Origin: Ylistrum balloti
Lineage: Eukaryota
Assembly: GCF_031769215.1 (NCBI RefSeq)
Contig: NW_026782569.1
Location: forward strand, 372,001-436,000
Length of the DNA: 64,000 nt
Direction: 5' to 3'
The notes beneath the pieces are model-generated. The model had not been told where the DNA came from. It was given only the letters and a program-made list of their open reading frames with translations, and searched no databases. This document shows, piece by piece, positions 266 to 61,200 of the stretch (the stretch's first letter is position 1; every line of letters starts with the position of its first letter). Both the position numbers and the translations under genes were made by a program.

Positions 266-608
266 GTAATACAATCTTTGAATGGTAACTATATTTACAC
301 ATGCGTTCTGTCGATAAAACCAATGTTGAAATTGCAATTGTTGAGCAAATATGTTATTGACTACACAGGATTTACCGTTTTCACAAGTTAAATTCTTAAT
401 GTTAAAATAATCAAGAACACACACACACACAATTGGCGAAAATTTTGGTACGATTTTTATCTATATATTGATAAGATGAAATAACGATAAACATCATTAT
501 CTAATAATATTCGTAAACAGTTCTATTTAAGAAGATTGCACACAAATCAAAGAAGTCAAAATTTCAATATAACTTAGTAAGAACCAGATAATGAATAGAA
601 CTGCGTAA

Positions 609-826
609 TACAGCTGTTTCGTCCTTCTAGGTCTCGTCATTGATACTACATCATACAGCTGTTTCGTCCTTCTACGTCTCGTCAGTGATTCTACATCATG
701 CAGCTGTTTCGTCCTTCTACGTCTCGTCAGTGATTCTACATCATACAGCTGTTTCGTCCTTCTAGGTCTCACCAGTGATACTACATCATATAGCTGTTTC
801 GTTCTTCTAAGTCTCGTAATTGATAA
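609..826 (-). ncRNA. Tandem array of five 45-bp minimal hammerhead ribozyme units
   Basis: Units start at 609, 654, 699, 744 and 789 (last one decayed). The reverse complement of unit 2 reads UGAU-GUAGA-AUCA (helix I), CUGACGA (core), GACG-UAGAA-GGAC (helix II, imperfect), GAAA, CAGCUG-UA (palindromic helix III plus GUA triplet). Confidence 0.85.
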
Positions 827-1821
827 TAAGGGCATATATCACGTAGCGTTAAGAAACTTATTCAATGATGGTGAAAATTCTTGAAATGGAGGTACATATA
901 CATTAGTCCCATCATTCATTAATTTTCTTCATTTTTTGAAAATAATTAATCCAGTAATTCCTGAATTGATCAAGTACGTGTATGCTCTAAAACGTGCCAA
1001 ATCCCAAGGACTAATTTCACTGGACAATCTAATATATACTGCGTCAAAGCTTAAAACGATTATGTTGTATCTTAATAAAATCTTGTAAGTTATTGATTTT
1101 TGTCACGGTATGGTGGTGTAGATATTTCATAAAAGAACTTTACATACTACTAAAAACATGAAATCTACCTATACATACACTCCACATCACTACGACAAAA
1201 CTCCATTATAATATATAGCCTGTACGTAGTAGGCAAAGTAACTATTAGGGTATAAAAATTCGACAATTATTGAATTACTTGTAAAATCTACTTGGTTTAT
1301 TAATGTTATAGATAAAAATAGGGCAATTGAAGGTGAATTTTACTGGATAAAAAATCTAGATTAAAAAGTCGATCAGACGGAGATATATACAAATCTGCTG
1401 CCTCCCATTTTATCACGGCTATGACGGGAGAAACAAAATGATCGCTATGGCTTCTATGTCTGGTATGTAACTTAATTTGGCTGCAAAGCGTATGTCTTAA
1501 AACGCGTTTCCTCTCAAAATTTCGGAATCAAAGCCAGTGAAAATATCCATTTTTTGGATTTAAACTGATTTCCGTCGATTTTTTTATCTGCAAGGAAAAT
1601 CAAAGTAAACGGTAGGTCCTTTATTTATCGACAAAGCGTCTCTCGGTATAGTTATTTAATATACATGTATCTTCCTATTCGTAATAGGACGATTTTATCT
1701 AATACAGAAAATCATTCTCCACATGAACTATACATTTACAATGGTTTTGCTTGTTTACAGAAGCACCTATTCCACGACGTTGTACAATGAACAAGAATTA
1801 GTGCTCGTTGATAAACCTTGT

Positions 1822-2407
1822 TGTACCTTATATCCCACAAACAAACTTCCGTATAAACAATGTTTCACCGTTCTTTATATCCACTAATAATCTTTCGTGA
1901 AAACAGTGTTTCGCCGTTCCGTATATCCTACTAACAAACTTTCGTGTTTCGCCGCCCTTTCTCATACCCCACTAACAATCTTTCATCAAGACAGTGCTCC
2001 CACGGTACCTCATACCCCACTAACAAACTTTCCTATGGACAGTGTTTCACTGTACTTTATATCCCACTAACAGACTTTCCTATGAACAGTGTTTCACTGT
2101 ACTTTATATCCCACTAACAAACTTTCGTGAAGATATTGTTTCACTGTACCTTATATCCCGCTAACAAACTTTCCTGTGAACAGTGTTTCACTGTACTTTA
2201 TATCCCACTAACAGACTTTCCTATGAACAGTGTTTCACTGTACTTTATATCCCACTAACAAACTTTCGTGAAGACAATGTTTCACTGTTCCTTATATCCC
2301 GCTAACAAACTTTCGTGAAGACAATGTTTCACTGTACCTCTCCCACTAACAAACTTTCGTGAAGACAATGTTTCACTGTACCTACTATCCCACTAACAAA
2401 CTTTCGT
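1822..2407. repeat. 47-bp minisatellite (~12 copies; degenerate copies continue to ~2770)
   Basis: Unit approximately ATATCCCACTAACAAACTTTCGTGAAGACAATGTTTCACTGTACCTT. Period confirmed by AGTGTTTCACTGT at 2041 and 2088. Confidence 0.92.
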
Positions 2408-29171: not shown

Positions 29172-31639
29172 TATCAAGGAATCTTAAAGGGGGATCTTCA
29201 AACCAGTGTCCGTAAATATATTGAATAATGAAAGCGTCTTTGAGATAAGATCAGATACACGCTTTGTTCTCTTTTACAATTCTTAAACTATCTCCAGAAT
29301 AGCCACAGGTGGTTAACTATTTCAATATTCGCCAGAATGCGCAAAGATTGAAAATACAACAAACAACTGAAAAGTAGAAACATATCAACACAATCATAAT
29401 CCAAACTCTGATTTAATAAAACAACGCCAAAATATGAACAAACGAGAGTTTTACACGGGAACTGTTGTAAAAACATTAGGATAATAGGACAATATATTCT
29501 CCTTCTTCATCGAAGACCATGTAAACTTTGGTAAATTCAAGCGAGAAATGTCACGTTCTCAAATTAGAACAAGATATACAACAAGGGAACATACAAAATT
29601 AGCGAGCATCAAATACATCCAGCTTCATATTGTATAGAGAAATATAATCATTCTCAATGAGAACACTATGTCCATCGAAAAACCTCCCTATAATTTTCAT
29701 TAACACACATCTTTTGAAATCTTGTGTTACGAGTTTCTCCATTTGGTGACAACGCCTTGTACAAAAATCGTAATAAGGTGAATAGACACCAATACTAGAA
29801 TATGTTGGATGAAAAAAAAAGAAGAAAAAAAAATTGAAATTTTCATCAAATTCAGAGACATTTTTCACATCTAATAAAATAAAAACATGTTTGTGAAAAT
29901 GTTAGCGGGACGGTACACTTTTATTTTAGAAATAAATAATGTGCCTGGTCACATTAAAGAATGCAAAAATTATCTAAGTCAATATATTCTTATTCTTTAC
30001 TATTACTTTATCCTTTATGGCAATGACAAACAAATTACGGCAATTCGCTATGTGCTGTACATGGAGTTATCGTTTCACCGACCATTTGTACCACTGATAC
30101 CGGCACAATTGTATTAACACAAGTTGCCAGACAGACCACTGCCCTCATAGAATAATAGACGTGCTTACGCTATATGCAATGAGTGGATTTGAGCAAGATT
30201 CTGCAAAGACCAATATCACACAGGTACTGGTGACAGGCATGGCTATTTACATAACACGGAGCTTTCTTTTCATCATGATTATGTCCCAAGTGTCGCCCTA
30301 AAACGACAGTAAGGGTCAAACGCATTTAACACTATGACGCTGTGTCTCGCTTCCAATTTGTTGGTGTATTCTATTATACAGACTGTCATTATAAATAGAC
30401 CCAAGATCCCTAGACAGCTTACAGATATGTGCAGCCATCGCTAACACTTTATAAACTAACAACACGAGCTGCTAGCCTCGATCTAAGGGCGAACCGCGTG
30501 AGGGCAGGGCTAGAGGGCGACGTCTGCGGACAATAAAACTAAACCAATCAAATTTATCGTCTGGCTCCCAGGGGCCCAATTGGATGTATATAACGTCCAG
30601 AGAGATGCAACATACGTGGTCCTACGAGATTATGGGAAACACGACAGCAGAATGGCGCACTATTGTGTATGAACTTCTTAATGGTCATCTTTTATACACG
30701 AAAGTCAAGACCACTTACTGATAAGGCGATCAGTTCGGCAGTTATGTCCAGCCTAAATATTTATGGACAGAACTTCACACATCTCTGTCACCCTACGTTA
30801 TCCGTTTCTACATCTTCTTCTTGTTAATGTTTCATAAGTATGCTAATATGTCAACAATGAAATAATTACAGCGAAATTCCAGTGAAATCAATGCCTTTGT
30901 AAACTCTCCATATGAAAAGCTTCATATATAGAAGTACTGGTCAAGTTGTTTCCTGCATAGTCAGAATACAAAGCCATATTATTCTAAACGATATCAAAAA
31001 TCTATATAATTATTGCCGTTACTATTGTTTACTTAATGGTCCCTCAAAACAGTCAGGATACAGGGTCCATGGTAGATAAAATGGTGCTAACGGATATATA
31101 ATAAATTTAACTGACCAAATACTGAACCAGTAAACAGCCGGTTTAGACTCTTCAATGTTCTATTAGTACTCTCTGTGGTGCTGTTCTCAGTGTACATTTT
31201 ACTGAAATGTCGTTCCTATATCACTTTGAAATAATACTCCTTAATCACACTAAGGTAATAATAAACTGGAATTTTGGCGTTTAGACTTAATAAAACAAAT
31301 CAGCACATTCATGAAATAATTAAAGTTATGGAAAGTTCATATAATATCGTTTTTTTTTTTCATTGAATGCACATTCTTAATATATGAATATCGAGTCTAA
31401 TGACAGGTAAGGAGAGCTTTGTCATAGCGCCTACCTAACAATTTTGACAACATTCACCGAGTTATTGGTTTCTCATAAAGATCTCATTGAGAAAATAAAT
31501 AAATAATAGGGTGATTTCTTTCTAAACACAATAGTTATATAGATAGTTTTGAGATTTACAAAACGATGAATCAATGTGAACAGCGCTTTTCAATTTGAAT
31601 GTAGAATTATGAATACAGTATATGTTCTAATGGAACTTG

Positions 31640-31680
31640 CATCATACACTGTTTCGTCATTCTAGGACTCGTCAGTGATG
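31640..31680 (-). ncRNA. Solo minimal type I hammerhead ribozyme, same family as 609-826
   Basis: Reverse complement: CAUCA, CUGACGA, GUC-CUAGAAU-GAC, GAAA, CAGUG-UA, UGAUG. It has a 5-bp helix I, intact core, 3-bp Watson-Crick helix II and GUA triplet. Helix III lacks one base of the ACAGCUGU palindrome. Confidence 0.78.
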
Positions 31681-32249
31681 TGGGGACAACTGATGGAAAT
31701 CAAAATGGGTTGAAATAGATATCAAAATTTCGATTTTTGTGTACTCAACATCTAAGAAAAGTACTGAAAATATGCATATTGAACTGAACGTTTATCTATC
31801 ATACCCTGTCATCATTAACTGGATAGCCTGCCGTAGTTTGTCTTCTACCGCTAGGCTTCACTGTGAAATATCAGGAAGATCGACATCTTAACGGAAATAA
31901 AATATACAGTATTCAGACTGATTGACCTTCTCAAAACGTAAATCTTTTAGGTGTTTAATTTCGCCGTGCTTACATTTTATTGACGTCTCAATTTCGACAA
32001 ATTGCCACAAAGTTGCGTGGCAGGACTTTTGGTTTCAATTTTCAGTTTCCCTATTGTGAATTTTCTTCTTCTGAATAGTAACATCCTGCATCTCCAACTT
32101 ACTGTGTTTTACGATTTGTGGTGGATTCGATGATATCCAAGGTCCTGGTTCCCATGTCGTTAAGTGACAATCAAACTCATAACACAAGAGACGCAATTAT
32201 ATTAACATTATGGGCATTTTACGTTTTTCATAAAGATCTCAATGAAATA

Positions 32250-38440: not shown

Positions 38441-38490
38441 ACTGCATCACTGACGAAACCTCGACTCGAGAAACAGCTGTATTATGCAGT
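38441..38490 (+). ncRNA. Solo type I hammerhead ribozyme, same family, degenerate helix II
   Basis: ACUGCAUCA, CUGACGA, AACCUCGACUCGA, GAAA, CAGCUG-UA, UUAUGCAGU. Helix I has 8 of 9 pairs, the core is intact, the ACAGCUGU palindrome is perfect and the triplet is GUA. Helix II lacks the canonical closing pair. Confidence 0.6.
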
Positions 38491-39691
38491 TTAATTCATT
38501 ATCCGGAACTAATCTAATTCTAAATTTGTAATAAAAGGTGCTAGTCATTTGTGTGCCTTTTGCACAATCTTGGAAGGACATGGATGTTCGGTTGTGCAGT
38601 ACAGGATTAATTAAAAAAAAATCTTTAGAAATGAATTTACTGATTTTTCAGGAGTCAACCCTTGTGACATGTTGAAGAGAGATTTATAATCTAATGATAG
38701 TTATTCGTGCCAAATATACTGAGAGACAGTCTATAGAAAGTTTGCATAGAAGAGTGTGAGTTTGCATGAGAAGAATTTACAACAATCATGAAATGTCCGA
38801 GAATTTTGATGTTGGAGAAAGATGTATTACAGGGACATTCTATATGTATCAATCACTATGCCCTCGAGTGAATTGTATTCGACATAAATCATAAACAACG
38901 CATTACAATATTGTATTTTTGAGATGCCATAGATTCGTCCCTTTGATGCTGATGTTTCAGTGCAGAATTTCTCCGAAGCATATCGACTGTTCAATAAGAA
39001 ACGATCATTGGTCTCTTATCAAAACACAAATGAAATATTACGTAATCTTTGCAGTAGACAATGTAACTCTAATTCTGTTCCTGTTTAAATGCTCTAGTTT
39101 CCGATGACGCAGCGTATATCACTAACATCAAGTCTAATTTAGAAAGATGTGATCAAAGCTATCGAAAACCATATTTCATTATTTTAAATTGCATGTTCGT
39201 ATGTTGTTTTTTTCAAAGATTACACTCATGATGAGTCTTGTTCCGTTTGAATTTTAATGTATTATTCATAGCAACACAAGAGTGCCTTTAGCTCTACACA
39301 AAGAAAGGGTCTCCATAAAGATTATATAAAAAGGAAGAAAATATGAGCGCATAACAGAGTCAAAACAAAGAAAATATCGGCTTGTTAGCATAATCTTAAT
39401 AACTCAATACAGAAAGTCGATAAAACACGGAGTTCACTGAAAATATATATCATTATAATTATTTGAAGAAGAACTCTCCGCTTATGGGAGGTGGGTGCAT
39501 GTGTTTGTGCAAGACTTTCTGTGATAATGCGGTTTTATATTGCTACTACACTGATCCACAGCGTCTCTGACAGTACGCCTCTGCCAGGGAGCAGAAAAAA
39601 AAACTTCCGGACAGGGGTGAACGGTTTAGTCAAGTAAAAAGCGACACAGTGTTAATGGAGACATTAAAAAAATATTTTGTTTTCTTTTCAG

Positions 39692-44840: not shown

Positions 44841-47800
44841 GTCTTAGTCTTAACGTCTATATAATTGAGCCTACCTTAGTCATAACGTCTATATAATTGA
44901 GCCTACCTTAGTCATAACGTCTATGTAATTGAGCCTACCTTAGTCTTAACGTCTGTATAATTAAACATATCTTAGTCTGAATGTCTATGTAAATGAGTCT
45001 ACATCAGTCTTAACGCTTGCTGAATTGGGTTTACTTTAGCCTTAACGATTGGTCTTTTGAATCGAATTGACTCTAAATATCTTGTTTCTATGTCTAAGTT
45101 AGTCTTAGCGTCTGTGTATTTGAACCTTATTTAGTTATCAGATCTGTATGTTCGAGCAACTTGATTCGCATCGTCTTAAAGATAATATAATGGAGCGTAC
45201 CTAAATCTTAGCATCTTTGTTATTGATCTTTATGTCACTAGTCTACATTAGTCTCAATGACCTTAGTCTTAACGCCTGTCATTGAATCTACCTTCGTCAA
45301 AGTATTTGAGTCTACCATACTCTTAACTACTCGCTTGGATTGCCCTAGTCTTGATATATCATTAATTGATCACATCCGAATATTAACGCAACTTCAACTG
45401 GTCCTACTTTAGTCTCTGTGTAAGTGAATCTAACTTTGTCATCCGGTATGTGTAAATGAGTCTACTTTTGTCATAATGTCTGTGTAAGTGAGCCTACCTT
45501 TGCCAGAACGTCTATGTAAGTGAGCCTACCTTTGTGATAACGTCTATGTAAGTGAGTCTACATTTGTCATAACATCTGTGTAAGTGAGTCTACCTTTACC
45601 AGAACGTCTTTGTATGTGAGCCTACCTTTGTCCTAACGTCTGTGTAATTGAGCCTACCTTTGTCATAATGTCAGTGAAATTGAGCTTACCTTTGTCATAA
45701 CGTCCATGTAAGTGAGCCTACCTTTGTCATAACGTCTGTGTAAGTGAGCCTACCTTTGTCATAATATCTATGTAAGTAAGCCTTACCTTTGTCATAACGT
45801 CTTTGTAGGTAAGCCTACCTTTGTCATAACGTCTATGTAAATGAGTCTATTTTGTCATACCGTCTATGTTAGTGAGCTTACCTTTGTCATAACGTCTGTG
45901 TAAGTGAACCTATCTTTGTCATAACGTCTGTGTAAATGAGCTTACCTTTGTCATAACGTCTATGTAAGTGAGCCTACTTTTGTCATAACGTCTGTGTAAT
46001 TTAGCTTACCTTTGTCATAACGTCTATGTAAGTGAGACTACTTTTGTCATAACGTCTATGTAATTTAGCTTACCTTTGTCATAACGTTGATGTAAGTGAG
46101 CTTACCTTTATAATAACGTCTGTGTAAATGAGCCTACCTTTGTTATAAGGTCTATGTAAGTGAGCTTAATTTTGTGATAACGTCTATGTAAGTGAGTGCA
46201 ACTTTGTGATAACGTCTATATAAGTGAGCTTACCTTTGTCATAACGTCCATGTAAGTGAGCCTACCTTTGTCATAACGTCTATGTAAGTGAGCCTACCTT
46301 TGTCATAACGTCTATGTAAGTGAGTGCAACTTTGTGATAACGTCTATATAAGTGAGCTTACCTTTGTCATAACGTCCATGTAAGTGAACCCATCTTTGTC
46401 ATAACGTCTGTGTAAATGAGCTTAACTTTGTCATAACGTCTATGTAAGTGAGCCTACTTTTGTCATAACGTCTGTGTAATTTAGCTTACCTTTGTCATAA
46501 CGTCTATGTAAGTGAGACTACTTTTGTCATAACGTCTATGTAATTTAGCTTACCTTTGTCATAACGTTTATGTAAGTGAGCTTACCTTTATAATAACGTC
46601 TGTGTAAATGAGCCTACCTTTGTTATAAGGTCTATGTAAGTGAGCTTAACTTTGTGATAACGTCTATGTAAGTGAGCGCAACTTTGTGATAACGTCTATA
46701 TAAGTGAGCTTACCTTTGTCATAACGTCTATGTAAGTGAGCCTACCTTTGTCATAACGTCTATGTAAGTGAGCCTACCTTTGTCATAACGTCTGTGTAAG
46801 TGAGCCTACCTTTGTCATAATATCTATGTAAGTAAGCCTACCTTTGTCATAACGTCTATGTAAGTGAGCCTACCTTTGTCATAACGTCTGTGTAAATGAT
46901 ATTACCTTTGTCATAATATCTATGTAAGTAAGCCTACCTTTGTCATAACGTCTATGTAAATGAGTCTATTTTGTCATACCGTCTATGTTAGTGAGCTTAC
47001 CTTTGTCATAACGTCTGTGTAAGTGAACCTATCTTTGTCATAACGTCTGTGTAAGTGAGCCTACTTTTGTCATAACGTCTGTGTAATTTAGCTTACCTTT
47101 GTCATAACGTCTATGTAAGTGAGACTACTTTTGTCATAACGTCTATGTAATTTAGCTTACCTTTGTCATAACGTTTATGTAAGTGAGCTTACCTTTATAA
47201 TAACGTCTGTGTAAATGAGCCTACCTTTGTTATAAGGTCTATGTAAGTGAGCTTAACTTTGTGATAACGTCTATGTAAGTGAGCGCAACTTTGTGATAAC
47301 GTCTATATAAGTGAGCTTACCTTTGTCATAACGTCTATGTAAGTGAGCCTACCTTTGTCATAACGTCTGTGTAAGTGAGCCTACCTTTGTCATAATATCT
47401 ATGTAAGTAAGCCTACCTTTGTCATAACGTCTGTGTAAATGATATTACCTTTGTCATAATATCTATGTAAGTAAGCCTACCTTTCTCATAACGTCTATGT
47501 AAATGAGTCTATTTTGTCATACCGTCTATGTTAGTGAGCTTACCTTTGTCATAACGTCTGTGTAAGTGAACCTATCTTTGTCATAACGTCTGTGTAAATG
47601 AGCTTACCTTTGTCATAACGTCTATGTAAGTGAGCCTGCCTTTGTCATAACGTCTGTGTAAGTGAGCCTACCTTTGTCATAACGTCTATGTAAGTGAGCC
47701 TACCTTTGTCATAACGTCTGTGTAAATGATATTACCTTTGTCATAATATCAATGTAAGTAAGCGTACCTTTGTCATAACGTCTTTGTAAATGAGCCTATA

Positions 47801-50800
47801 TTTGTCATAACGTCTGTGTAAGTGAGCCTTCATTTGTCATAATATATATGTAAGTAAGCCTTCCTTTGTCATAACGTCTGTTTAAGTGAGCCTACCTTTG
47901 TCATAATATCTATGTAAGTAAGCCTTCCCTTTGTCATAACGTCTTTGTAGGTAAGCCTACCTTTGTCATAACGTCTTTGTAAATGAGTCTATTTTGTCAT
48001 AACGTCTATGTTAGTGAGCTTACTTTTGTCATAACGTCTATGTAAGTGAGCCTACTTTTGTCATAACGTCTGTGTAATTTAGCTTACCTTTGTCATAACG
48101 TCTTTGTAAGTGAGACTACTTTTGTCATAACGTCTATGTAATTTAGCTTACCTTTGTCATAACGTTTACGTAAGTGAGCTTACCTTTATAATAACGTCTG
48201 TGTAAGTGAATCTATCTTTGTCATAACGTCTGTGTAAATGAGCCTACCTTTGTTATCAGGTCTATGTAAGTGAGCTTAACTTTGTGATAACGTCTATGTA
48301 AGTGAGCGCAACTTTGTGATAACGTCTATATAAGTGAGCTTAGCTTTGTCATAACGTCTTTGTAAATGAGTCTATTTTGTCATAACGTCTATGTTAGTGA
48401 GCTTACCTTTGTTATAACGTCTGTGTAAGTGAACCTAACTTTGTCATAACGTCTGTGTAAATGAGCTTACCTTTGTCATAACGTCTATGTAAGTGAGCCT
48501 ACTTTTGTCATAACGTCTGTGTAATTTAGCTTACCTTTGTCATAACGTCTATGTAAGTGAGACTACTTTTGTCATAACGTCTATGTAATTTAGCTTACCT
48601 TTGTCATAACGTTTATGTAAGTGAGCTTACCTTTATAATAACGTCTGTGTAAGTGAACCTATCTTTGTCATAACGTCTGTGTCAATGAGCCTTCCTTTGT
48701 CATAATATCTATGTAAGTAAGCCTTCCTTTGTCATAACGTCTGTGTAAGTGAGCCTACCTTTGTCATAATATCTATGTAAGTAAGCCTTACCTTTGTCAT
48801 AACGTCTTTGTAGGTAAGCCTACCTTTGTCATAACGTCTATGTAAATGAGTCTATTTTGTCATACCGTCTATGTTAGTGAGCTTACCTTTGTCATAACGT
48901 CTGTGTAAGTGAACCTATCTTAGTCATAACGTCTGTGTAAATGAGCTTACCTTTGTCATAACGTCTATGTAAGTGAGCCTACTTTTGTCATAACGTCTGT
49001 GTAATTTAGCTTACCTTTGTCATAACGTCTATGTAAGTGAGACTACTTTTGTCATAACGTCTATGTAATTTAGCTTACCTTTGTCATAACGTTTATGTAA
49101 GTGAGCTTACCTTTATAATAACGTCTGTGTAAATGAGCCTACCTTTGTTATAAGGTCTATGTAAGTGAGCTTAACTTTGTGATAACGTCTATGTAAGTGA
49201 GCGCAACTTTGTGATAACTTTGTGATAACGTCTATGTAAGTGAGCCTACCTTTGTCATAACGTCTATGTAAGTGAGCCTACCTTTGTCATAACGTCTGTG
49301 TAAGTGAGCCTACCTTTGTCATAATATCTATGTAAGTAAGCCTACCTTTGTCATAACGTCTATGTAAGTGAGCCTACCTTTGTCATAACGTCTGTGTAAA
49401 TGATATTACCTTTGTCATAATATCTATGTAAGTAAGCCTACCTTTGTCATAACGTCTATGTAAATGAGTCTATTTTGTCATACCGTCTATGTTAGTGAGC
49501 TTACCTTTGTCATAACGTCTGTGTAAGTGAACCTATCTTTGTCATAACGTCTGTGTAAATGAGCTTACCTTTGTCATAACGTCTATGTAAGTGAGCCTAC
49601 TTTTGTCATAACGTCTGTGTAATTTAGCTTACCTTTGTCATAACGTCTATGTAAGTGAGACTACTTTTGTCATAACGTCTATGTAATTTAGCTTACCTTT
49701 GTCATAACGTTTATGTAAGTGAGCTTACCTTTATAATAACGTCTGTGTAAATGAGCCTACCTTTGTTATAAGGTCTATGTAAGTGAGCTTAACTTTGTGA
49801 TAACGTCTATGTAAGTGAGCGCAACTTTGTGATAACGTCTATATAAGTGAGCTTACCTTTGTCATAACGTCTATGTAAGTGAGCCTACCTTTGTCATAAC
49901 GTCTGTGTAAGTGAGCCTACCTTTGTCATAATATCTATGTAAGTAAGCCTACCTTTGTCATAACGTCTATGTAAGTGAGCCTACCTTTGTCATAACGTCT
50001 GTGTAAATGATATTACCTTTGTCATAATATCTATGTAAGTAAGCCTACCTTTGTCATAACGTCTATGTAAATGAGTCTATTTTGTCATACCGTCTATGTT
50101 AGTGAGCTTACCTTTGTCATAACGTCTGTGTAAGTGAACCTATCTTTGTCATAACGTCTGTGTAAATGAGCTTACCTTTGTCATAACGTCTATGTAAGTG
50201 AGCCTACTTTTGTCATAACGTCTGTGTAATTTAGCTTACCTTTGTCATAACGTCTATGTAAGTGAGACTACTTTTGTCATAACGTCTATGTAATTTAGCT
50301 TACCTTTGTCATAACGTTTATGTAAGTGAGCTTACCTTTATAATAACGTCTGTGTAAATGAGCCTACCTTTGTTATAAGGTCTATGTAAGTGAGCTTAAC
50401 TTTGTGATAACGTCTATGTAAGTGAGCGCAACTTTGTGATAACGTCTATATAAGTGAGCTTACCTTTGTCATAACGTCTATGTAAGTGAGCCTACCTTTG
50501 TCATAACGTCTGTGTAAGTGAGCCTACCTTTGTCATAATATCTATGTAAGTAAGCCTACTTTTGTCATAACGTCTATGTAAGTGAGCCTACCTTTGTCAT
50601 AACGTCTGTGTAAATGATATTACCTTTGTCATAATATCTATGTAAGTAAGCCTACCTTTGTCATAACGTCTATGTAAATGAGTCTATTTTGTCATACCGT
50701 CTATGTTAGTGAGCTTACCTTTGTCATAACGTCTGTGTAAGTGAACCTTTCTTTGTCATAACGTCTGTGTAAATGAGCTTAACTTTGTCATAACGTCTAT

Positions 50801-53170
50801 GTAAGTGAGCCTACTTTTGTCATAACGTCTGTGTAATTTAGCTTACCTTTGTCATAACGTCTATGTAAGTGAGACTACTTTTGTCATAACGTCTATGTAA
50901 TTTAGCTTACCTTTGTCATAACGTTTATGTAAGTGAGCTTACCTTTATAATAACGTCTGTGTAAATGAGCCTACCTTTGTTATAAGGTCTATGTAAGTGA
51001 GCTTAACTTTGTGATAACGTCTATGGAAGTGAGCGCAACTTTGTGATAACGTCTATATAAGTGAGCTTACCTTTGTCATAACGTCTATGTAAGTGAGCCT
51101 ACCTTTGTCATAACTTCTATGTAAGTGAGCCTACCTTTGTCATAACGTCTGTGTAAGTGACCCTATCTTTGTCATAATATCTATGTAAGTAAGCCTACCT
51201 TTGTCATAACGTCTATGTAAGTGAGCATACCTTTGTCATAACGTCTGTGTAAATGATATTACCTTTGTCATAATATCTATGTAAGTAAGCCTACCTTTGT
51301 CATAACGTCTATGTAAATGAATCTACAATTATCATAACGTCTGTGTAGGTGAGCCTACCTTTGTCATAACGTCTTTGTAAGTGAGCCTATATTTGTCATT
51401 ACGTCTGTGTAAGTGAGCCTACCCTTGTCATAATATCTATGTAAGTAAGCCTTACCTTTGTCATAACGTCTTTGTAGGTAAGCCTACCTTTGTCATAACG
51501 TCTTTGTAAATGAGTCTATTTTGTCATAACGTCTATGTAAATGAATCCACAATGATCATAACCTCTGTGTAGGTGAGCCTACCTTTGTTATAACGTCTAT
51601 GTAAGTGAGATTAACTTTGTGATAACGTCTATGTAAGTGAGTCTAACCTTGTGATAACGTCTATATAAGTGAGCTTACCTTTGTCATAATGTCTATGTAA
51701 GTGAGCCTAACTTTGTCATAACGTCTATGTATCTGTGTGAGCCTAGTTTTGTCTTGCCGTCTATATAATTGAGTTTACCATTGTCATAACGTCTGTGTAA
51801 GTGAGCCTACCTTTGTCATAACGTCTGTGTAAGGGAGCCTACCTTTGTCATAACGTCTATCTTTGTGAGCCTACCTTTGTCATAACGTCTATGTAAGTGA
51901 GCCCACCTTTGTCATGACGTCTATTTTTGTGAGTCTAATTTTGTCTTGCTGTCTATATAATTGAGTTTACCATTGTCATAACGTCTGTGTAAGTGAGCCT
52001 ACCTTTGTCATAACGTCTATCTTTGTGAGCCTAGTTTTGTCTTGCCGTCTATATAATTGAGTTTACCATTGTCATAATGTCTGTGTAAGTGAACCTACCT
52101 TTGTCATAACGTCTGTGTAAGGGAGCCTACCTTTGTCATAACGTCTATTTTTGTGAGTCTAGTTTTGTCTTGCTGTCTATATAATTGAGTTTACCATTGT
52201 CATAACGTCTGTGTAAGTGAGCCTACCTTTGTCATAACGTCTATCTTTGTGAGCCTAGTTTTGTCTTGCCGTCTATATAATTGAGTTTACCATTGTCATA
52301 ATGTCTGTGTAAGTGAGCCTACCTTTGTCATAACGTCTGTGTAAGGGAGCCTACCTTTGTCATAACGTCTATCTTTGTGAGCCTACCTTTGTCATAACGT
52401 TTATGTAAGTGAGCCCACCTTTGTCATAACGTCTATCTTTGTGAGCTTACCTTTGTCATAACGTCTATCTTTGTGAGCCTAGTTTTGTCTTGCCGTCTAT
52501 ATAATTGAGTTTACCATTGTCATAATGTCTGTGTAAGTGAGCCTACCTTTGTCATAACGTCTGTGTAAGTGAGCCTACCTTTGTCATAACGTCTATCTTT
52601 ATGAGCCTACCTTTGTCATAACGTTTATGTAAGTGAGCCCACCTTTGTCATAACGTCTATCTTTGTGAGCTTACCTTTGTCATAACGTCTGTGTAAGTGA
52701 GCCTACCTTTGTCATAACGTCTGTGTAAGTGAGCCTACCTTTGTCATAACGTCTGTGTAAGTGAGCCTACCTTTGTCATAACGTCTATCTTTGTGAGCTT
52801 GCCTTTGTCATAACGTCTGTGTAAGTGAGCCTACCTTTGTCATAACGTCTGTGTAAGTGAGCCTACCTTTGTCATAACGTCTTTGTAGGTGAGCCTACCT
52901 TTGTCATAACGTCTATCTTTGTGAGCCTACCTTTGTCATAACGTCTATGTAAGTGAGCCTACCTTTGTCATAACGTCTATGTAAGGGAGCCTACCTTTGT
53001 CATAACGTCTATCTTTTTCTTGACACCTATGTAATTTAGCGTATGCTGACCTTCTCTGTAACTGAACTTATCTTTTTAGCGTCTACTTGATTGAACCACT
53101 CTTAGTCTTATCATCTACGTTTTTGCGTCTGTCTTAATCATGTCTTTGTAATTGAACCTATCTTAGTCGT
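44841..53170. repeat. 32-bp satellite array (~260 units) with higher-order structure and diverged edges
   Basis: Consensus GTAAGTGAGCCTACCTTTGTCATAACGTCTAT; period 32 (CCTACC at 46741 and 46773). Homogeneous core ~45450-53015. Confidence 0.98.
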
Positions 53171-58290: not shown

Positions 58291-61200
58291 ACTTATCATA
58301 ACATGGTTTTTATGCCTTATGTCGGTAACTGACAGACGAACTACACAGAGTTTTGGGAGATGCAGGTTGATGTTAATATTCTTATACAATAAGAAGTTCT
58401 TAAATGCTCGTTTAAAGTGTGTCCATTTCGGAACATGACAATGCTTATTTGGGTTAAACAAGTTTTTAACGTACCCGTACCCTCTGGAACACATGGCCTT
58501 ATTCTGCTGACACCTTTATGAAGTTCCAGCGTAATTGTTTGTTTGTTTCTATTCTTAGCATACTTTCTCATTGGATATCAGTTTAGATAAAGGTTACATT
58601 TACATATTGGTATTTTCTTTGTTTCTTGTTATCAGGATCTCCCCTGTTTTTGAATTCAGAGGTATTATGGATAATCTGTTTCCTATACCATTCGTTATAT
58701 GTCGTGAGCTTTCCTCAGGGATTTGAACGAAAGAGACATAGTCTAATATAGACCCTTCAACTATGAGTATAGAATTAAGTATAGCGAACATATGGCTAAA
58801 ATGAATTATACCACACCATAAAGCTTTCAAAAACGACATTCTTGGTCTTGTCATTGATGCTTGGGGTCTAAAGTATTGAAATTAGGAGGCAATTGTACAA
58901 TATCATATTTACCCGAAAAAATGTCGTTACTATTCTAGAAATATCTTGAAATTGTCTTATTGTACGTTTTGATAAATTTCCTGTATCCATTATTTGCCAT
59001 CAATGTATCGATTTTTTAAGATAACCTAGTTCCCTATGAGCATAAACATATTGACTTTACATTCAACATATCTTGCAATCGCTATTTTTCGAAGTGTTGT
59101 CAACCACATGTGGTGAGATGTTTTATTAAATTCACTAAAAGATGCTATCAATCCAATATTTACCATCAGTTATGTTTTTTATGCTCGATTGCCTTTTCTA
59201 TTTTTCCAATGCAGAACAAGCTGTGAGATACCAAATTAATTATAATATGTTTTTTTTCTAGAAGATTGAGGCTTTTTTTTTTCTTTAACAGGCAGTGATT
59301 TAGATATCTAAGGCGCTTTGAATCTACACGATGATGGATCTATGTTAAATACTGTGTCTGCGAATTAGGATCTTACAAAAATCTGGTTTTATCCGCAGAC
59401 TTCAAAGTCGAAAGAGTCAACTTTACTAAATATTTTGCTTATTTCTAATATAGGCACGGTTCAGGAGATACATATGCACTTGAAGTTCAAAAATTATATG
59501 AAAATCACAAAATTAATTGAAAAATCCGGTTAGTACAACACTCAATTTAGGTTTTGACGCTTGGTTCGATAACTCGGTCGCCCCATAGGCTTCAAAAATT
59601 AAACCCATTATATCACTGACTCGTCCCGGAAGCACATTTAATTTATTGTTTGAGCCTAAAGTATCAAACTTTAAACCTGTATTAAAAGTTCCTGGTATTA
59701 AGATGTGTGTCTTTTCTACAATATTTGAAAAGGTTCAGCGTTGGCATGCTTTCATTCAGTATTCAATCAATAATATTGAATGTAAAAAGTAAACAAAGAA
59801 TAAAAACAAAAACAAAAACGCAAACTTATTGCATTTCATATGTGATAGGAAACATATCTTGACTTAATTATAATTTCAATTTAAGATTCGGAATTGATAT
59901 CAATAAAACAAAGACACGTTTGGTCGTAATATTTAACCTTTTTCTTCTAATCGCTGGAATGGCAGACAAAGATATTCTCTCTGAAACCTACAATATAGAC
60001 GTATTATTCGGAAGGATTGATGAAGGCTGTCCAAAGATAGCGATGTAAAAATATCAGTAAGGACGATCTAGGGATATATATGTGTCATGTAAATGCTGGC
60101 CTCATTGTAAACAAACAATTCAATTATACCAGCTCACTTCGGTATCAAAAGATAATAAGTTATATCCATTCAGGTTCAATATTCTATTAGCATTTGATGA
60201 CAAGCCTCATAACTTAGAGGTAACTACCATCAAGTATCGAGGGAAGCGTCCTATCTGATGATGTGTGCATGAATTTATATTAACAGTGTATTGACCGTCT
60301 GACGGATATAAACTTAGAAGTGACACTATATCATAGCTATATACATTAGATATATTCATATCTATGTATAAACGGCATATAACATACCATACTGATGAAA
60401 TAGACTTGCATATCTTTTCTAAAAATAGCAAAAATAACCAACATGGATGGAGAAGAATAGGTGTTTCGCGTATATATATATATTCCTTTGAAACTTTTAG
60501 CTTAGCCTTTTTTGTTCGTTATTGTAAAACATATTAAGATATTTCTATTTTCATTTTTATTTCTTAAAGAACAATAAAAAAAAGTTCAGAAATTAGAAGC
60601 GTACTTTTAAATACTGTTTCATTACACACCATTTTGATTGGACATTCCTTAGATTTGCTCGTACCTTGCTTTTTTACCGGTATGTTTTTATCTGCGGTGT
60701 AGTAGATTGTACCACGACTTAATGCGGGAAGGTCATAAAACTCGAGGCATCAATTACATCAGCCACATCTAGGTGATGTTGAAGCGTTGTACAGAAAAAA
60801 AATCGTCTGGTTAATATTGAAAGTTTTTATTTTCACACTGTCACCAATATGGTTTCAGATTTAGGTCATAGAAAACAATTGATGCAATCTGATATCCCAC
60901 TGGAAAAGATTCTATGGGGTTACTTGTACCAGAATTTCTATGTGTACGAAAAATATCCTGTGGTGAGATTTCAGCATAAAGAATTTACAGTGAATTTCCG
61001 GTAGATTTCAAAAACACATGAATTAACATCATAGAAAGTGAAATATGTATTAAGCTTGTGTACATACAAATATGTACTTGACAGCAAGCAAACGACAGTC
61101 GAAGAAATAACACTTCTGAAATAACATAGGCATGTTCTGTACAATGTTCATATACATGCATATAATATATAAAAATATATTCTTTAAATTCCGTGTTACA

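What the first reader, a model, noticed from the sequence alone, without database searches (positions are those of the whole stretch)
609..826. Ribozyme-only satellite: 45-bp tandem repeat in which each unit is a complete hammerhead
Seen: on the - strand each unit reads UGAU-G-UAG(A/U)-AUCA, CUGACGA, GAC(C/G)-UAGAA-GGAC, GAAA, CAGCUG-UA, with no spacer between units. ACAGCUGU is palindromic, so the CAGCUGU of one unit can pair with the ACAGCUG of the next to form a 7-bp helix III. Helix I then closes as a hairpin, giving a type III fold. Unit 3 (699-743) has an intact core and an upstream GUA. Unit 1 has C3>A, unit 4 has CUGGUGA, one junction is GCA, and all units have an A.A mismatch in helix II. 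Known: minimal type I HHRs with palindromic helix III occur in Penelope-like elements and animal retrozymes. There they cleave as dimers, and the repeat monomers are typically hundreds of nt. Inference: an antisense transcript could self-process into ~45-nt monomers with 5'-OH and cyclic-phosphate ends that RtcB could circularise, i.e. an extremely reduced retrozyme or selfish RNA.
Basis: partly seen in the sequence, partly recalled or inferred. Interest (0 to 1): 0.9.

Follow-up and report, generated by a model that had tools for sequence, protein, structure and literature searches.

The report
Decayed 45-bp hammerhead ribozyme minisatellite
A five-unit, 45-base DNA repeat really is built from one small self-cutting (hammerhead) RNA motif per unit, but it is a mutated local amplification of the ribozyme part of a common small mobile element and is very unlikely to cut itself into 45-base pieces.

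Summary
Observation confirmed. TRF finds a 45-bp array at 608-825; I count five units on the minus strand (833-609). Each unit reads helix I hairpin, CUGANGA box, helix II, GAAA, then the palindrome ACAGCUGU and A. Rfam's type III hammerhead model aligns end to end with two units, but at 29.9 and 27.0 bits against a gathering score of 48.5.

Only two of five cores are intact (U2, U3). In those two, helix II is G-C, A.A, C-G, G.G. The essential G10.1-C11.1 pair has probability 0.002, while a mispairing that sequesters C11.1 and G12 has about 0.6. The one fully consensus unit whose helix II does form (U4) has C3>A, and the site between the two good cores is GCA. At best two sites 90 nt apart could be cut, so 45-nt monomers cannot be released.

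The array is not free-standing. Its last unit continues into a tail of about 85-110 nt shared with four solo copies in the same window. It is therefore an internal amplification of the ribozyme module of a dispersed, non-coding, Penelope/retrozyme-type element.

This scan has already noted many such 45-bp arrays on other DNA of this genome. Two follow-ups reached the same reading. Interest is moderate to low for this locus.

The parts
609..833 (-). Five-unit 45-bp tandem array; each unit is one minimal hammerhead module
   Evidence: TRF (608-825, period 45, 4.8 copies, 90%); register and unit dissection
789..833 (-). U0, a degenerate edge unit: box AUUACGA, helix II GACU/GAAC, helix III CAGCUA-UA
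   Evidence: nhmmer hit 835-781
744..788 (-). U1: box CUGGUGA (A6>G, dead core); helix II GACC/GGAC; ends GUA
699..743 (-). U2: intact CUGACGA...GAAA core; helix II GACG/GGAC (A.A and G.G); ends GCA (U16.1>C). With the GUA of U1 it gives the best Rfam hit (701-751, 29.9 bits)
654..698 (-). U3: intact core; same defective helix II as U2; ends GUA; the preceding site is GCA
609..653 (-). U4: box AUGACGA (C3>A); helix II GACC/GGAC forms (P about 0.86); ends GUA and continues into the element tail. Rfam hit 611-661, 27.0 bits
526..608 (-). Tail of the parent dispersed element, colinear with the last array unit and homologous to the sequence downstream of the solo hammerheads
   Evidence: nhmmer with a profile built only from the two solo copies hits 644-576, E 2.6e-11. 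blastn of the array's downstream side vs the 38450 copy gives 72% over 111 bp, E 1.9e-13, and vs the 31640 copy 74% over 91 bp, E 5e-10. Alignment A2.
38442..38568 (+). Solo copy of the element: CUGCAUCA-CUGACGA-(decayed helix II)-GAAA-CAGCUGUA-UUAUGCAG plus tail; open helix I of up to 8 bp (type I)
31555..31683 (-). Solo copy, the best preserved: CAUCA-CUGACGA-GUC..GAC-GAAA-CAGUGUA-UGAUG plus tail. Core intact; helix II has U10.2-A11.2; a 1-nt deletion destroys the palindrome
58722..58862 (-). Decayed solo copy: AUGACAA box, 5-nt insertion before GAAA, helix II GAC..GUC with A10.2-U11.2, plus tail
59612..59721 (+). Decayed solo copy: AUCA-CUGAC..., GAAA lost, plus tail
527..835 (-). Mechanical 102-aa ORF through the array (45 = 15 codons); judged non-coding
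   Evidence: no Pfam family at cutoff; no homologue; by inspection, all differences between units U1-U4 change the amino acid in this frame

Best explanation
The array is a small minisatellite. It arose by tandem amplification of the ~45-nt hammerhead module inside one copy of an abundant, short, non-coding dispersed element: hammerhead plus a tail of about 85-150 nt. That element is of the Penelope-like-element / animal-retrozyme kind.

The duplicated segment runs from the last 4-5 nt of the 5' strand of helix I to the last nt of its 8-nt 3' strand. Each unit is therefore a complete type I hammerhead, and head-to-tail units can also be read as type III hammerheads joined by the ACAGCUGU palindrome.

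The units have since decayed. No unit combines an intact catalytic core with a formable helix II, and one cleavage triplet is GCA. A minus-strand transcript, if one is made, would at most be cut inefficiently at two sites 90 nt apart (744|743 and 654|653). It would not be processed into 45-nt monomers.

Shown: anatomy, embedding in the element, mutations, fold predictions. Inferred: that the amplification happened as DNA (slippage or unequal exchange, either in situ or in a master copy that was then copied), and that the array is catalytically inert.
For: 1. Array and unit anatomy.
2. Hammerhead identity: full-length alignment to Rfam Hammerhead_3 at 29.9 and 27.0 bits, E 1.8e-4 and 1.2e-3 locally, and E 0.025 and 0.17 over the window. 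Motif counts are 3 against 0.00-0.03 expected.
3. Embedding: the last unit continues into a tail homologous to the flanks of the solo copies. nhmmer with a profile made only from the solos gives E 2.6e-11; blastn gives E 1.9e-13 and 5e-10. Five loci of the family lie in 64 kb.
4. The solos show the ancestral architecture is an open-helix-I type I minimal hammerhead, with helix I up to 8 bp in the 38450 copy.
5. Helix II is supported by a compensatory pair between copies: U-A at 31640 and A-U at 58850, while the array has A.A.
6. Decay: 3 of 5 cores are mutated at C3, A6 or U4-G5, and one site is GCA.
7. In the intact-core units P(G10.1-C11.1) = 0.002, and the competing C10.3-G12 and G10.4-C11.1 pairs have P of about 0.57-0.60. 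The hammerhead fold is -6.4 kcal/mol against an MFE of -10.2.
8. The whole array folds no better than shuffles, z = +1.39. Single units fold at only -1.6 to -3.2 kcal/mol.
9. The edge unit U0 is the most divergent, as in DNA-level homogenised arrays (established knowledge).
10. No RT, endonuclease or any other Pfam domain appears in the 19 other ORFs scanned (9 of the 18 ORFs of 85 aa or more window-wide, plus 10 ORFs of 55 aa or more within 6.5 kb), so the locus is non-autonomous.
Against: Activity was not measured. Thermodynamic models do not capture tertiary contacts, and minimal hammerheads with weak helix II can retain trace activity at high Mg2+.

The amplified segment coincides almost exactly with the ribozyme, within about 4 nt. 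That is unexpected for a random DNA duplication in an element of 150-300 bp, and it hints at a link with the RNA structure or with RNA processing.

Many arrays with the same 45-bp period are noted elsewhere in the genome (unchecked). Independent in-situ slippage does not predict that unless an array-bearing master element spread.

The upstream flank of the array shows no convincing homology to the ~60 nt shared upstream by two solos. I therefore cannot show that the array is flanked by the element on both sides.
Confidence: 0.7

Rival explanations
1. RNA-level birth, now dead. The array, or the master copy it descends from, was made by a reverse transcriptase, for example a Penelope-like RT. 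The RT copied a tiny circular or concatenated hammerhead-processed RNA, or switched templates repeatedly at the ribozyme. The product was inserted with the element's tail and 5'-truncated. The locus has since decayed.
For: The unit equals the whole ribozyme to within about 4 nt. The 3' side is the element tail, while the 5' side lacks family homology, as expected for a 5'-truncated target-primed insertion. The same 45-bp period is reported for many arrays in this genome (unchecked). Rolling-circle reverse transcription giving multimeric cDNA is the published model for retrozymes (PMC7761336, PMC7229834).
Against: No array end coincides with a cleavage site: the last unit passes without a break into UUACGCAG plus tail. 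Releasing a 45-nt RNA needs two active sites 45 nt apart, which presupposes the array. A 45-nt unit barely folds. The follow-ups on larger arrays in this genome also favoured DNA expansion (unchecked).
Confidence: 0.17
2. This is a living ribozyme-only satellite, or ultra-minimal retrozyme. Its minus-strand transcript self-cleaves into ~45-nt monomers that are circularised and propagate.
For: All hammerhead elements are present in every unit, and the 7-bp inter-unit helix III is predicted to form (P(A15.1-U16.1) = 0.92). One junction (744|743) has GUA followed by an intact core.
Against: Only 2 of 5 cores are intact, and their helix II is predicted not to form. The site between them is GCA. 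The best-case product is 90 nt, not 45 nt. The Rfam score is far below gathering. There is no structural z-score signal. The array is embedded in a dispersed element.
Confidence: 0.05
3. A coding repeat. The 102-aa ORF at 527-835 (minus strand) would encode a basic 15-residue repeat protein with a hydrophobic C-terminus.
For: An ATG-initiated open frame spans the whole array and tail.
Against: A period of 45 is a multiple of 3, so an open frame is expected mechanically. No Pfam family reaches its cutoff (F-box_5 16.5 against 25.5 bits). No homologue was found. By inspection, all nucleotide differences between units U1-U4 are non-synonymous in this frame. The same sequence occurs as solo non-coding copies.
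Confidence: 0.01
4. A chance resemblance of a simple minisatellite to the hammerhead consensus.
For: The Rfam score is below gathering. The E-value over the whole window is only 0.025. The covariation score does not exceed shuffles with eight sequences.
Against: The core pattern is expected 0.00-0.03 times and found at three independent loci. The solo copies are diverged (about 68-80% over aligned stretches) yet keep the core boxes, the helix register (74.5% of cells paired against 10-47% when slid) and a compensatory helix II pair. The architecture equals published Penelope-type minimal hammerheads (PMC4209133) and that of an unrelated metagenomic example (L001).
Confidence: 0.02

Closest known systems
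Minimal type I hammerheads of Penelope-like elements and their dispersed solo copies in metazoan genomes (Cervera & de la Pena 2014, PMC4209133; reviewed in PMC6765202 and PMC7761336)
   Same: Type I topology in the solo copies. Short helix I (4-8 bp). Conserved G10.1-C11.1. A very short helix III whose sequence is palindromic, so that two copies pair (dimeric or 'double' hammerhead). Thousands of dispersed, variable, mostly solo copies in non-coding DNA. Low or no activity as monomers.
   Different: No RT/GIY-YIG ORF or pseudo-LTR arrangement was found among the ORFs scanned in this window. Helix II here is short (3-4 bp), not the 6-8 bp reported for the Schistosoma and Drosophila virilis examples. 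There is no extra nucleotide between A9 and G10.1. Published tandem PLE hammerheads are kilobases or hundreds of bp apart, not 45 bp with zero spacer.
Metazoan non-LTR retrozymes, e.g. Mytilus galloprovincialis repeats of ~350-390 bp (Cervera & de la Pena 2020, PMC7229834; Li et al. 2026 preprint 10.64898/2026.07.22.740005)
   Same: Head-to-tail DNA repeats with one type I hammerhead per monomer, low GC, non-coding, and thought to depend on Penelope-like elements. The solo element here (ribozyme plus tail) may be a fragment of such a family.
   Different: The repeat unit is 45 bp, i.e. the ribozyme alone. The cited paper describes short tandem repeats of ~300 bp monomer size (200-400 nt in the species studied) that fold into stable rod-like circles. 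Most units here are mutated at invariant positions. No expression or circle data exist for this locus.
Double-hammerhead of newt satellite 2 and avocado sunblotch viroid (Forster et al. 1988, as cited in PMC4209133)
   Same: An unstable 2-bp helix III with a palindromic loop. In multimeric transcripts it is replaced by an extended inter-copy helix III, so that one copy's core cuts the neighbour's site.
   Different: In those systems the two ribozymes are separated by a full monomer of ~250-330 nt, and cleavage is demonstrated. Here the spacer is zero and cleavage is untested and unlikely.
Tandem repeats born inside mobile elements, e.g. tandem-repeat-containing MITEs of bivalves (DTC84 of Donax trunculus, PMC3879986; review PMC6947457; seen here only at abstract level)
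   Same: A short array of a few units sits inside a high-copy, non-autonomous dispersed element. Edge units are more diverged.
   Different: In those elements the repeated module is not a ribozyme, and the units are longer.

Membership tests
Hammerhead ribozyme (Rfam clan CL00010) | Invariant core: C3 U4 G5 A6 N7 G8 A9, G12 A13 A14, the A15.1-U16.1 pair, and H17 (not G) at the cleavage site | tested here: inconclusive
   GAAA is present in all five units. The CUGANGA box is intact only in U2 and U3; U1 has A6>G, U4 has C3>A and U0 has AUUACGA. The sites are AUA, GUA, GCA, GUA, GUA. One complete type III combination exists (GUA of U1 plus the U2 core) and one type I combination (U3 core plus its own GUA).
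Hammerhead ribozyme (Rfam clan CL00010) | Three helices around the core, with helix II closed by G10.1-C11.1 and at least two stacked pairs | tested here: not met
   Helices I (4 bp) and III (7 bp between units) form. Helix II has A.A at 10.2-11.2 in all units and G.G at 10.4-11.4 in the intact-core units. There, P(G10.1-C11.1) = 0.002 and a competing helix uses C11.1 and G12 (P about 0.6). Helix II forms only in the core-mutant U4.
Hammerhead ribozyme (Rfam clan CL00010) | Score at or above the curated Rfam gathering threshold | tested here: not met
   No hit at gathering score in the window. The best Hammerhead_3 scores are 29.9 and 27.0 bits against 48.5. The solo copies are not reported at E of 5 or less.
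Hammerhead ribozyme (Rfam clan CL00010) | [quoted passage not shown] | not testable with these tools
   This needs in vitro transcription of the minus strand of 590-845, or RNA end-mapping.
Penelope-like element pseudo-LTR hammerhead | Minimal type I motif with a short, palindromic helix III able to dimerise | tested here: met
   The solo copies have an open helix I, and ACAGCUGU follows GAA. Cofolding two units pairs the palindromes.
Penelope-like element pseudo-LTR hammerhead | Location in repeats flanking an RT plus GIY-YIG endonuclease ORF | tested here: not met
   Of the 20 ORFs scanned (10 of the 19 ORFs of 85 aa or more window-wide, plus 10 ORFs of 55 aa or more within 6.5 kb of the array), none matches any Pfam family at cutoff. 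Heavily degraded remnants and unscanned ORFs cannot be excluded.
Metazoan non-LTR retrozyme | Head-to-tail genomic repeats, each monomer carrying one type I hammerhead | tested here: met
   Five head-to-tail units, one motif each.
Metazoan non-LTR retrozyme | A monomer of a few hundred nt that folds into a stable, highly self-paired circle | tested here: not met
   The monomer is 45 nt. Single units fold at -1.6 to -3.2 kcal/mol. Array z-score is +1.39. Published monomer sizes are ~200-400 nt (PMC7229834).
Metazoan non-LTR retrozyme | Expression as self-cleaved linear and circular monomeric RNA | not testable with these tools
   No transcriptome data are available here. The sequence predicts no excisable 45-nt monomer.

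The most novel reading that the evidence does not exclude
The 45-nt hammerhead-only unit is, or recently was, a replicating entity in its own right. It would be the smallest retrozyme: excised from arrays by neighbouring ribozymes, circularised, and copied back into DNA as new arrays by a Penelope-type reverse transcriptase. On that reading this locus is a decayed relic of one such insertion. It would explain why the unit matches the ribozyme so exactly and why many arrays in this genome share the 45-bp period.
Probability: 0.06. Interest if true: 0.8.

Novelty: new variant of a known kind. Interest (0 to 1): 0.3.

Why it matters
Hammerhead-bearing tandem repeats (retrozymes, newt and schistosome satellites) and dispersed Penelope-type minimal hammerheads are well known. 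A repeat whose entire unit is the ribozyme, with no spacer, is not in the literature I could search. As a genome-wide class it is a neat example of a structured RNA module of a mobile element turning into a minisatellite. It also raises the question of whether the RNA structure or its processing biases where the duplication boundaries fall.

This locus adds little to that. It is short and decayed, it is predicted to be inert, and the same class has already been reported by this scan on other DNA of the genome. Its practical value is as a caution: motif-complete hammerhead arrays should be scored unit by unit, for core, site and helix II together, before self-processing is inferred.

Tried and rejected
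- Rfam at gathering score over the window: no family.
- Public collections, searched for independent copies to use in covariation. The core plus helix II string gave 0 hits in metagenome contigs. A looser pattern with the palindrome gave 3 metagenome contigs, none of the same family; only L001 is a convincing hammerhead. There were 0 hits in bacterial/archaeal genomes, and 0 in viral contigs for the unit junction.
- Using the array ORF as a handle to find other arrays called as 'proteins' in public assemblies: no candidate.
- Coding reading of the 102-aa ORF: rejected.
- A tRNA-derived (SINE-like) head for the parent element: no tRNA-like sequence found by ARAGORN. A B-box-like GGTTCGATAAC near 59560 was not pursued.
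- Reverse transcriptase or endonuclease remnants near the array or elsewhere in the window: none in the 19 other ORFs scanned.
- Homology of the array's upstream flank to the ~60 nt shared upstream by two solos: suggestive by eye in MAFFT but not supported by blastn or nhmmer. Left open.
- Formal covariation on eight modules: register-specific pairing is clear, but covariation does not exceed shuffles with so few sequences.
- Lunse et al. 2017 (PMC5785218) could not be read.
- The host taxon could not be confirmed from coding sequence, because no ORF looks like a real protein. 'Bivalve' rests on earlier scan notes only.

Full report
**1. What is there**

Tandem Repeats Finder reports a 45-bp repeat at 608-825 with 4.8 copies, 90% matches and no indels. 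Reading the minus strand in register gives five head-to-tail units.

| Unit | Coordinates | CUGANGA box | Helix II | Unit ends with |
|---|---|---|---|---|
| U0 | 833-789 | AUUACGA (mutated) | GACU/GAAC | AUA |
| U1 | 788-744 | CUGGUGA (A6>G) | GACC/GGAC | GUA |
| U2 | 743-699 | CUGACGA (intact) | GACG/GGAC | GCA |
| U3 | 698-654 | CUGACGA (intact) | GACG/GGAC | GUA |
| U4 | 653-609 | AUGACGA (C3>A) | GACC/GGAC | GUA |

**2. Is it a hammerhead, and more than chance?**

At Rfam gathering thresholds nothing in the window is reported. With permissive thresholds the type III hammerhead model aligns over its full length to 701-751 (29.9 bits) and 611-661 (27.0 bits). The gathering score is 48.5. 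E-values are 1.8e-4 and 1.2e-3 for the 451-nt stretch, and 0.025 and 0.17 for the whole window.

The string CUGANGA-N6-30-GAAACAGCUG occurs three times against 0.00 expected. CUGANGA-N8-24-CGAAAC occurs three times against 0.03 expected.

The motif also recurs at independent, diverged loci (section 3). Those loci keep the helix register: 74.5% of cells are paired, against 10-47% when the partners are slid. They also show a compensatory exchange in helix II: U10.2-A11.2 in the 31640 copy and A10.2-U11.2 in the 58850 copy. With only eight sequences the covariation score does not exceed shuffles. I therefore take the motif to be hammerhead-derived, not a chance look-alike, while noting that it fails the curated family threshold.

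**3. Context: the array sits inside a dispersed element**

The sequence after the last unit (UUACGCAGUUCUAUUCAUUAUCUGG...) is homologous to the sequence after solo copies of the same motif.
- A profile built only from the two solos at 38450 (+) and 31640 (-) hits 644-576 at E 2.6e-11. It also finds a fourth copy at 58754-58886.
- blastn of the array's downstream side gives 72% over 111 bp to the 38450 copy (E 1.9e-13) and 74% over 91 bp to the 31640 copy (E 5e-10).
- The multiple alignment and a family profile show five loci in 64 kb sharing the ribozyme plus about 85-150 nt of tail. The fifth is a decayed copy at 59612-59721.

In most pairs homology begins about 5 nt before the CUGANGA box. 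Only the 38450 and 31640 copies share a further ~60 nt upstream.

None of the other 19 ORFs scanned matches a Pfam family, and there is no tRNA-like head. The parent is thus a short, abundant, non-coding element, probably represented here by 5'-truncated copies.

The solos show the ancestral design: an open helix I (up to 8 bp, CUGCAUCA/UGAUGCAG in the 38450 copy), CUGACGA, a 3-4 bp helix II, GAAA, and the palindrome ACAGCUGU followed by A. This is the minimal type I hammerhead with a palindromic helix III described for Penelope-like elements and for thousands of dispersed solo motifs in animal genomes (PMC4209133, PMC7761336). An unrelated metagenomic contig carries a clean example with the same palindrome and a perfect 5-bp helix II (L001).

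**4. What was amplified**

Compared with the solos, the 45-nt unit runs from the last 4-5 nt of the 5' strand of helix I to the last nt of its 8-nt 3' strand (alignment A3). The whole type I ribozyme was therefore duplicated head to tail.

In such an array the 3' strand of helix I of one unit lies next to the 5' strand of the next and forms a hairpin. Neighbouring palindromes 45 nt apart form a 7-bp helix III. It is the classical double hammerhead of tandem type I motifs (Forster et al. 1988, as cited in PMC4209133), here with zero spacer.

**5. Can it work?**

I enumerated the core-site combinations.

In the type III or dimer reading, the core of unit n+1 cuts the site at the end of unit n.
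- U0|U1: dead core.
- U1|U2: GUA plus an intact core. This is the only complete combination.
- U2|U3: the site is GCA (U16.1>C).
- U3|U4: the core has C3>A.

In the type I reading a core cuts the site after its own unit.
- U2: the site is GCA.
- U3: the site is GUA, so this combination is complete. But helix III is then only 2 bp with an AGCU loop unless it is dimerised.

At most two sites are therefore candidates, 744|743 and 654|653. They are 90 nt apart, so a 45-nt monomer cannot be released.

Both candidate cores (U2, U3) also carry helix II as G-C, A.A, C-G, G.G.
- In the 51-nt type III construct for U2, the probability of the essential G10.1-C11.1 pair is 0.002.
- The competing pairs C10.3-G12 and G10.4-C11.1 have probabilities of 0.57 and 0.60.
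- The hammerhead fold is -6.4 kcal/mol against an MFE of -10.2.
- The unit in which helix II forms (U4, P about 0.86) has the C3>A core.

It is established knowledge, recalled and not tested here, that changes at C3, A6 and U16.1 and loss of helix II each reduce cleavage by orders of magnitude. The whole array folds no better than shuffled sequence (z = +1.39), and single units are essentially unstructured. Published Penelope-type minimal hammerheads cleave poorly in vitro even when intact and dimeric (PMC4209133).

**6. Most likely history**

The ribozyme module was amplified inside a copy of the dispersed element. This happened either in situ or in a master copy that was then retrotransposed with 5' truncation. 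Mutational decay followed.

Three things favour a DNA-level process: the colinear passage of the last unit into the tail, the more diverged edge unit U0, and the general habit of mobile elements, notably in bivalves, of carrying internal short arrays (PMC3879986 and PMC6947457, abstract level only).

I cannot exclude an RNA-level birth. The near-exact coincidence of the unit with the ribozyme, and the recurrence of the 45-bp period in many arrays noted elsewhere in this genome (unchecked), are the observations that a plain slippage model explains least well.

**7. Relation to earlier scan notes**

The scan has found this class before on other DNA of the same genome. Many first-reader notes describe 45-bp hammerhead arrays of 8 to about 105 units. 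Two follow-ups (s1-258766, s1-234339) concluded that such arrays are expansions inside a dispersed element, one of them mostly dead. Notes s1-254450 and s1-234345 describe the shared 3' tail and a ~230-bp dispersed family.

I treated these as leads. In this window I verified independently the shared tail, the solo copy at 31640 (s1-254470), and the decay. 'Bivalve' as host rests on those notes only, since no ORF here allowed a check.

**8. Known versus new**

Tandem hammerhead repeats are known with monomers of a few hundred nt (~350-390 bp in mussel, PMC7229834). Penelope hammerheads are known in tandem at hundreds of bp to kilobase spacing (PMC4209133). In the papers I could search I found no description of a repeat whose unit is the ribozyme alone.

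I therefore rate the class as a new variant of a known kind. I rate this locus as a small, decayed and probably inert member of it.

Noticed in passing
window 1822-2407: A second minisatellite about 1 kb from the hammerhead array: 47-bp unit, 12.7 copies, 80% matches. On the minus strand the unit contains GAAACACUGU and CGAAAG but no CUGANGA box, so it is not a hammerhead. Any relation to the neighbouring element is unknown.
   Followed up: partly
window 44843-53012: An ~8-kb satellite with a 32-bp unit (over 250 copies, ~83% matches) and a strong negative AT skew (-0.16 to -0.19). A short stretch resembling the unit (CTTTGTCATAGCG..CCTACC) lies at about 31416-31437, next to the solo hammerhead element.
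   Followed up: no
window 527-835 (-): A 102-aa ATG-initiated ORF runs through the array. It gives a basic 15-residue repeat followed by a hydrophobic stretch encoded by the element tail. It is judged a by-product of the 45 = 3 x 15 period.
   Followed up: yes
window 417-431: An (AC)7.5 microsatellite lies about 95 nt beyond the recognisable end of the element tail. Penelope-like elements are reported to prefer microsatellite targets (PMC8557442), but no link was tested.
   Followed up: no
window 59540-59575: A B-box-like GGTTCGATAAC sits about 50 nt upstream of the decayed hammerhead copy at 59612. ARAGORN finds no tRNA-like gene in the window.
   Followed up: partly
L001 1856-1903 (-), metagenome contig Ga0138346_10227699: A clean solo minimal type I hammerhead: CAUCA, CUGAUGA, a perfect 5-bp helix II, GAAA, and the same ACAGCUGU palindrome. 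It sits in unrelated environmental eukaryote-like DNA, so this helix III design is not peculiar to this genome.
   Followed up: partly
window 15708-15920: A 91-bp repeat, 2.3 copies, 90% matches, with an internal 24-bp sub-repeat.
   Followed up: no
window 22772-23209: A run of 438 N (assembly gap or masked stretch). It was left untouched. The two longest ORFs in the window are artefacts of it.
   Followed up: no
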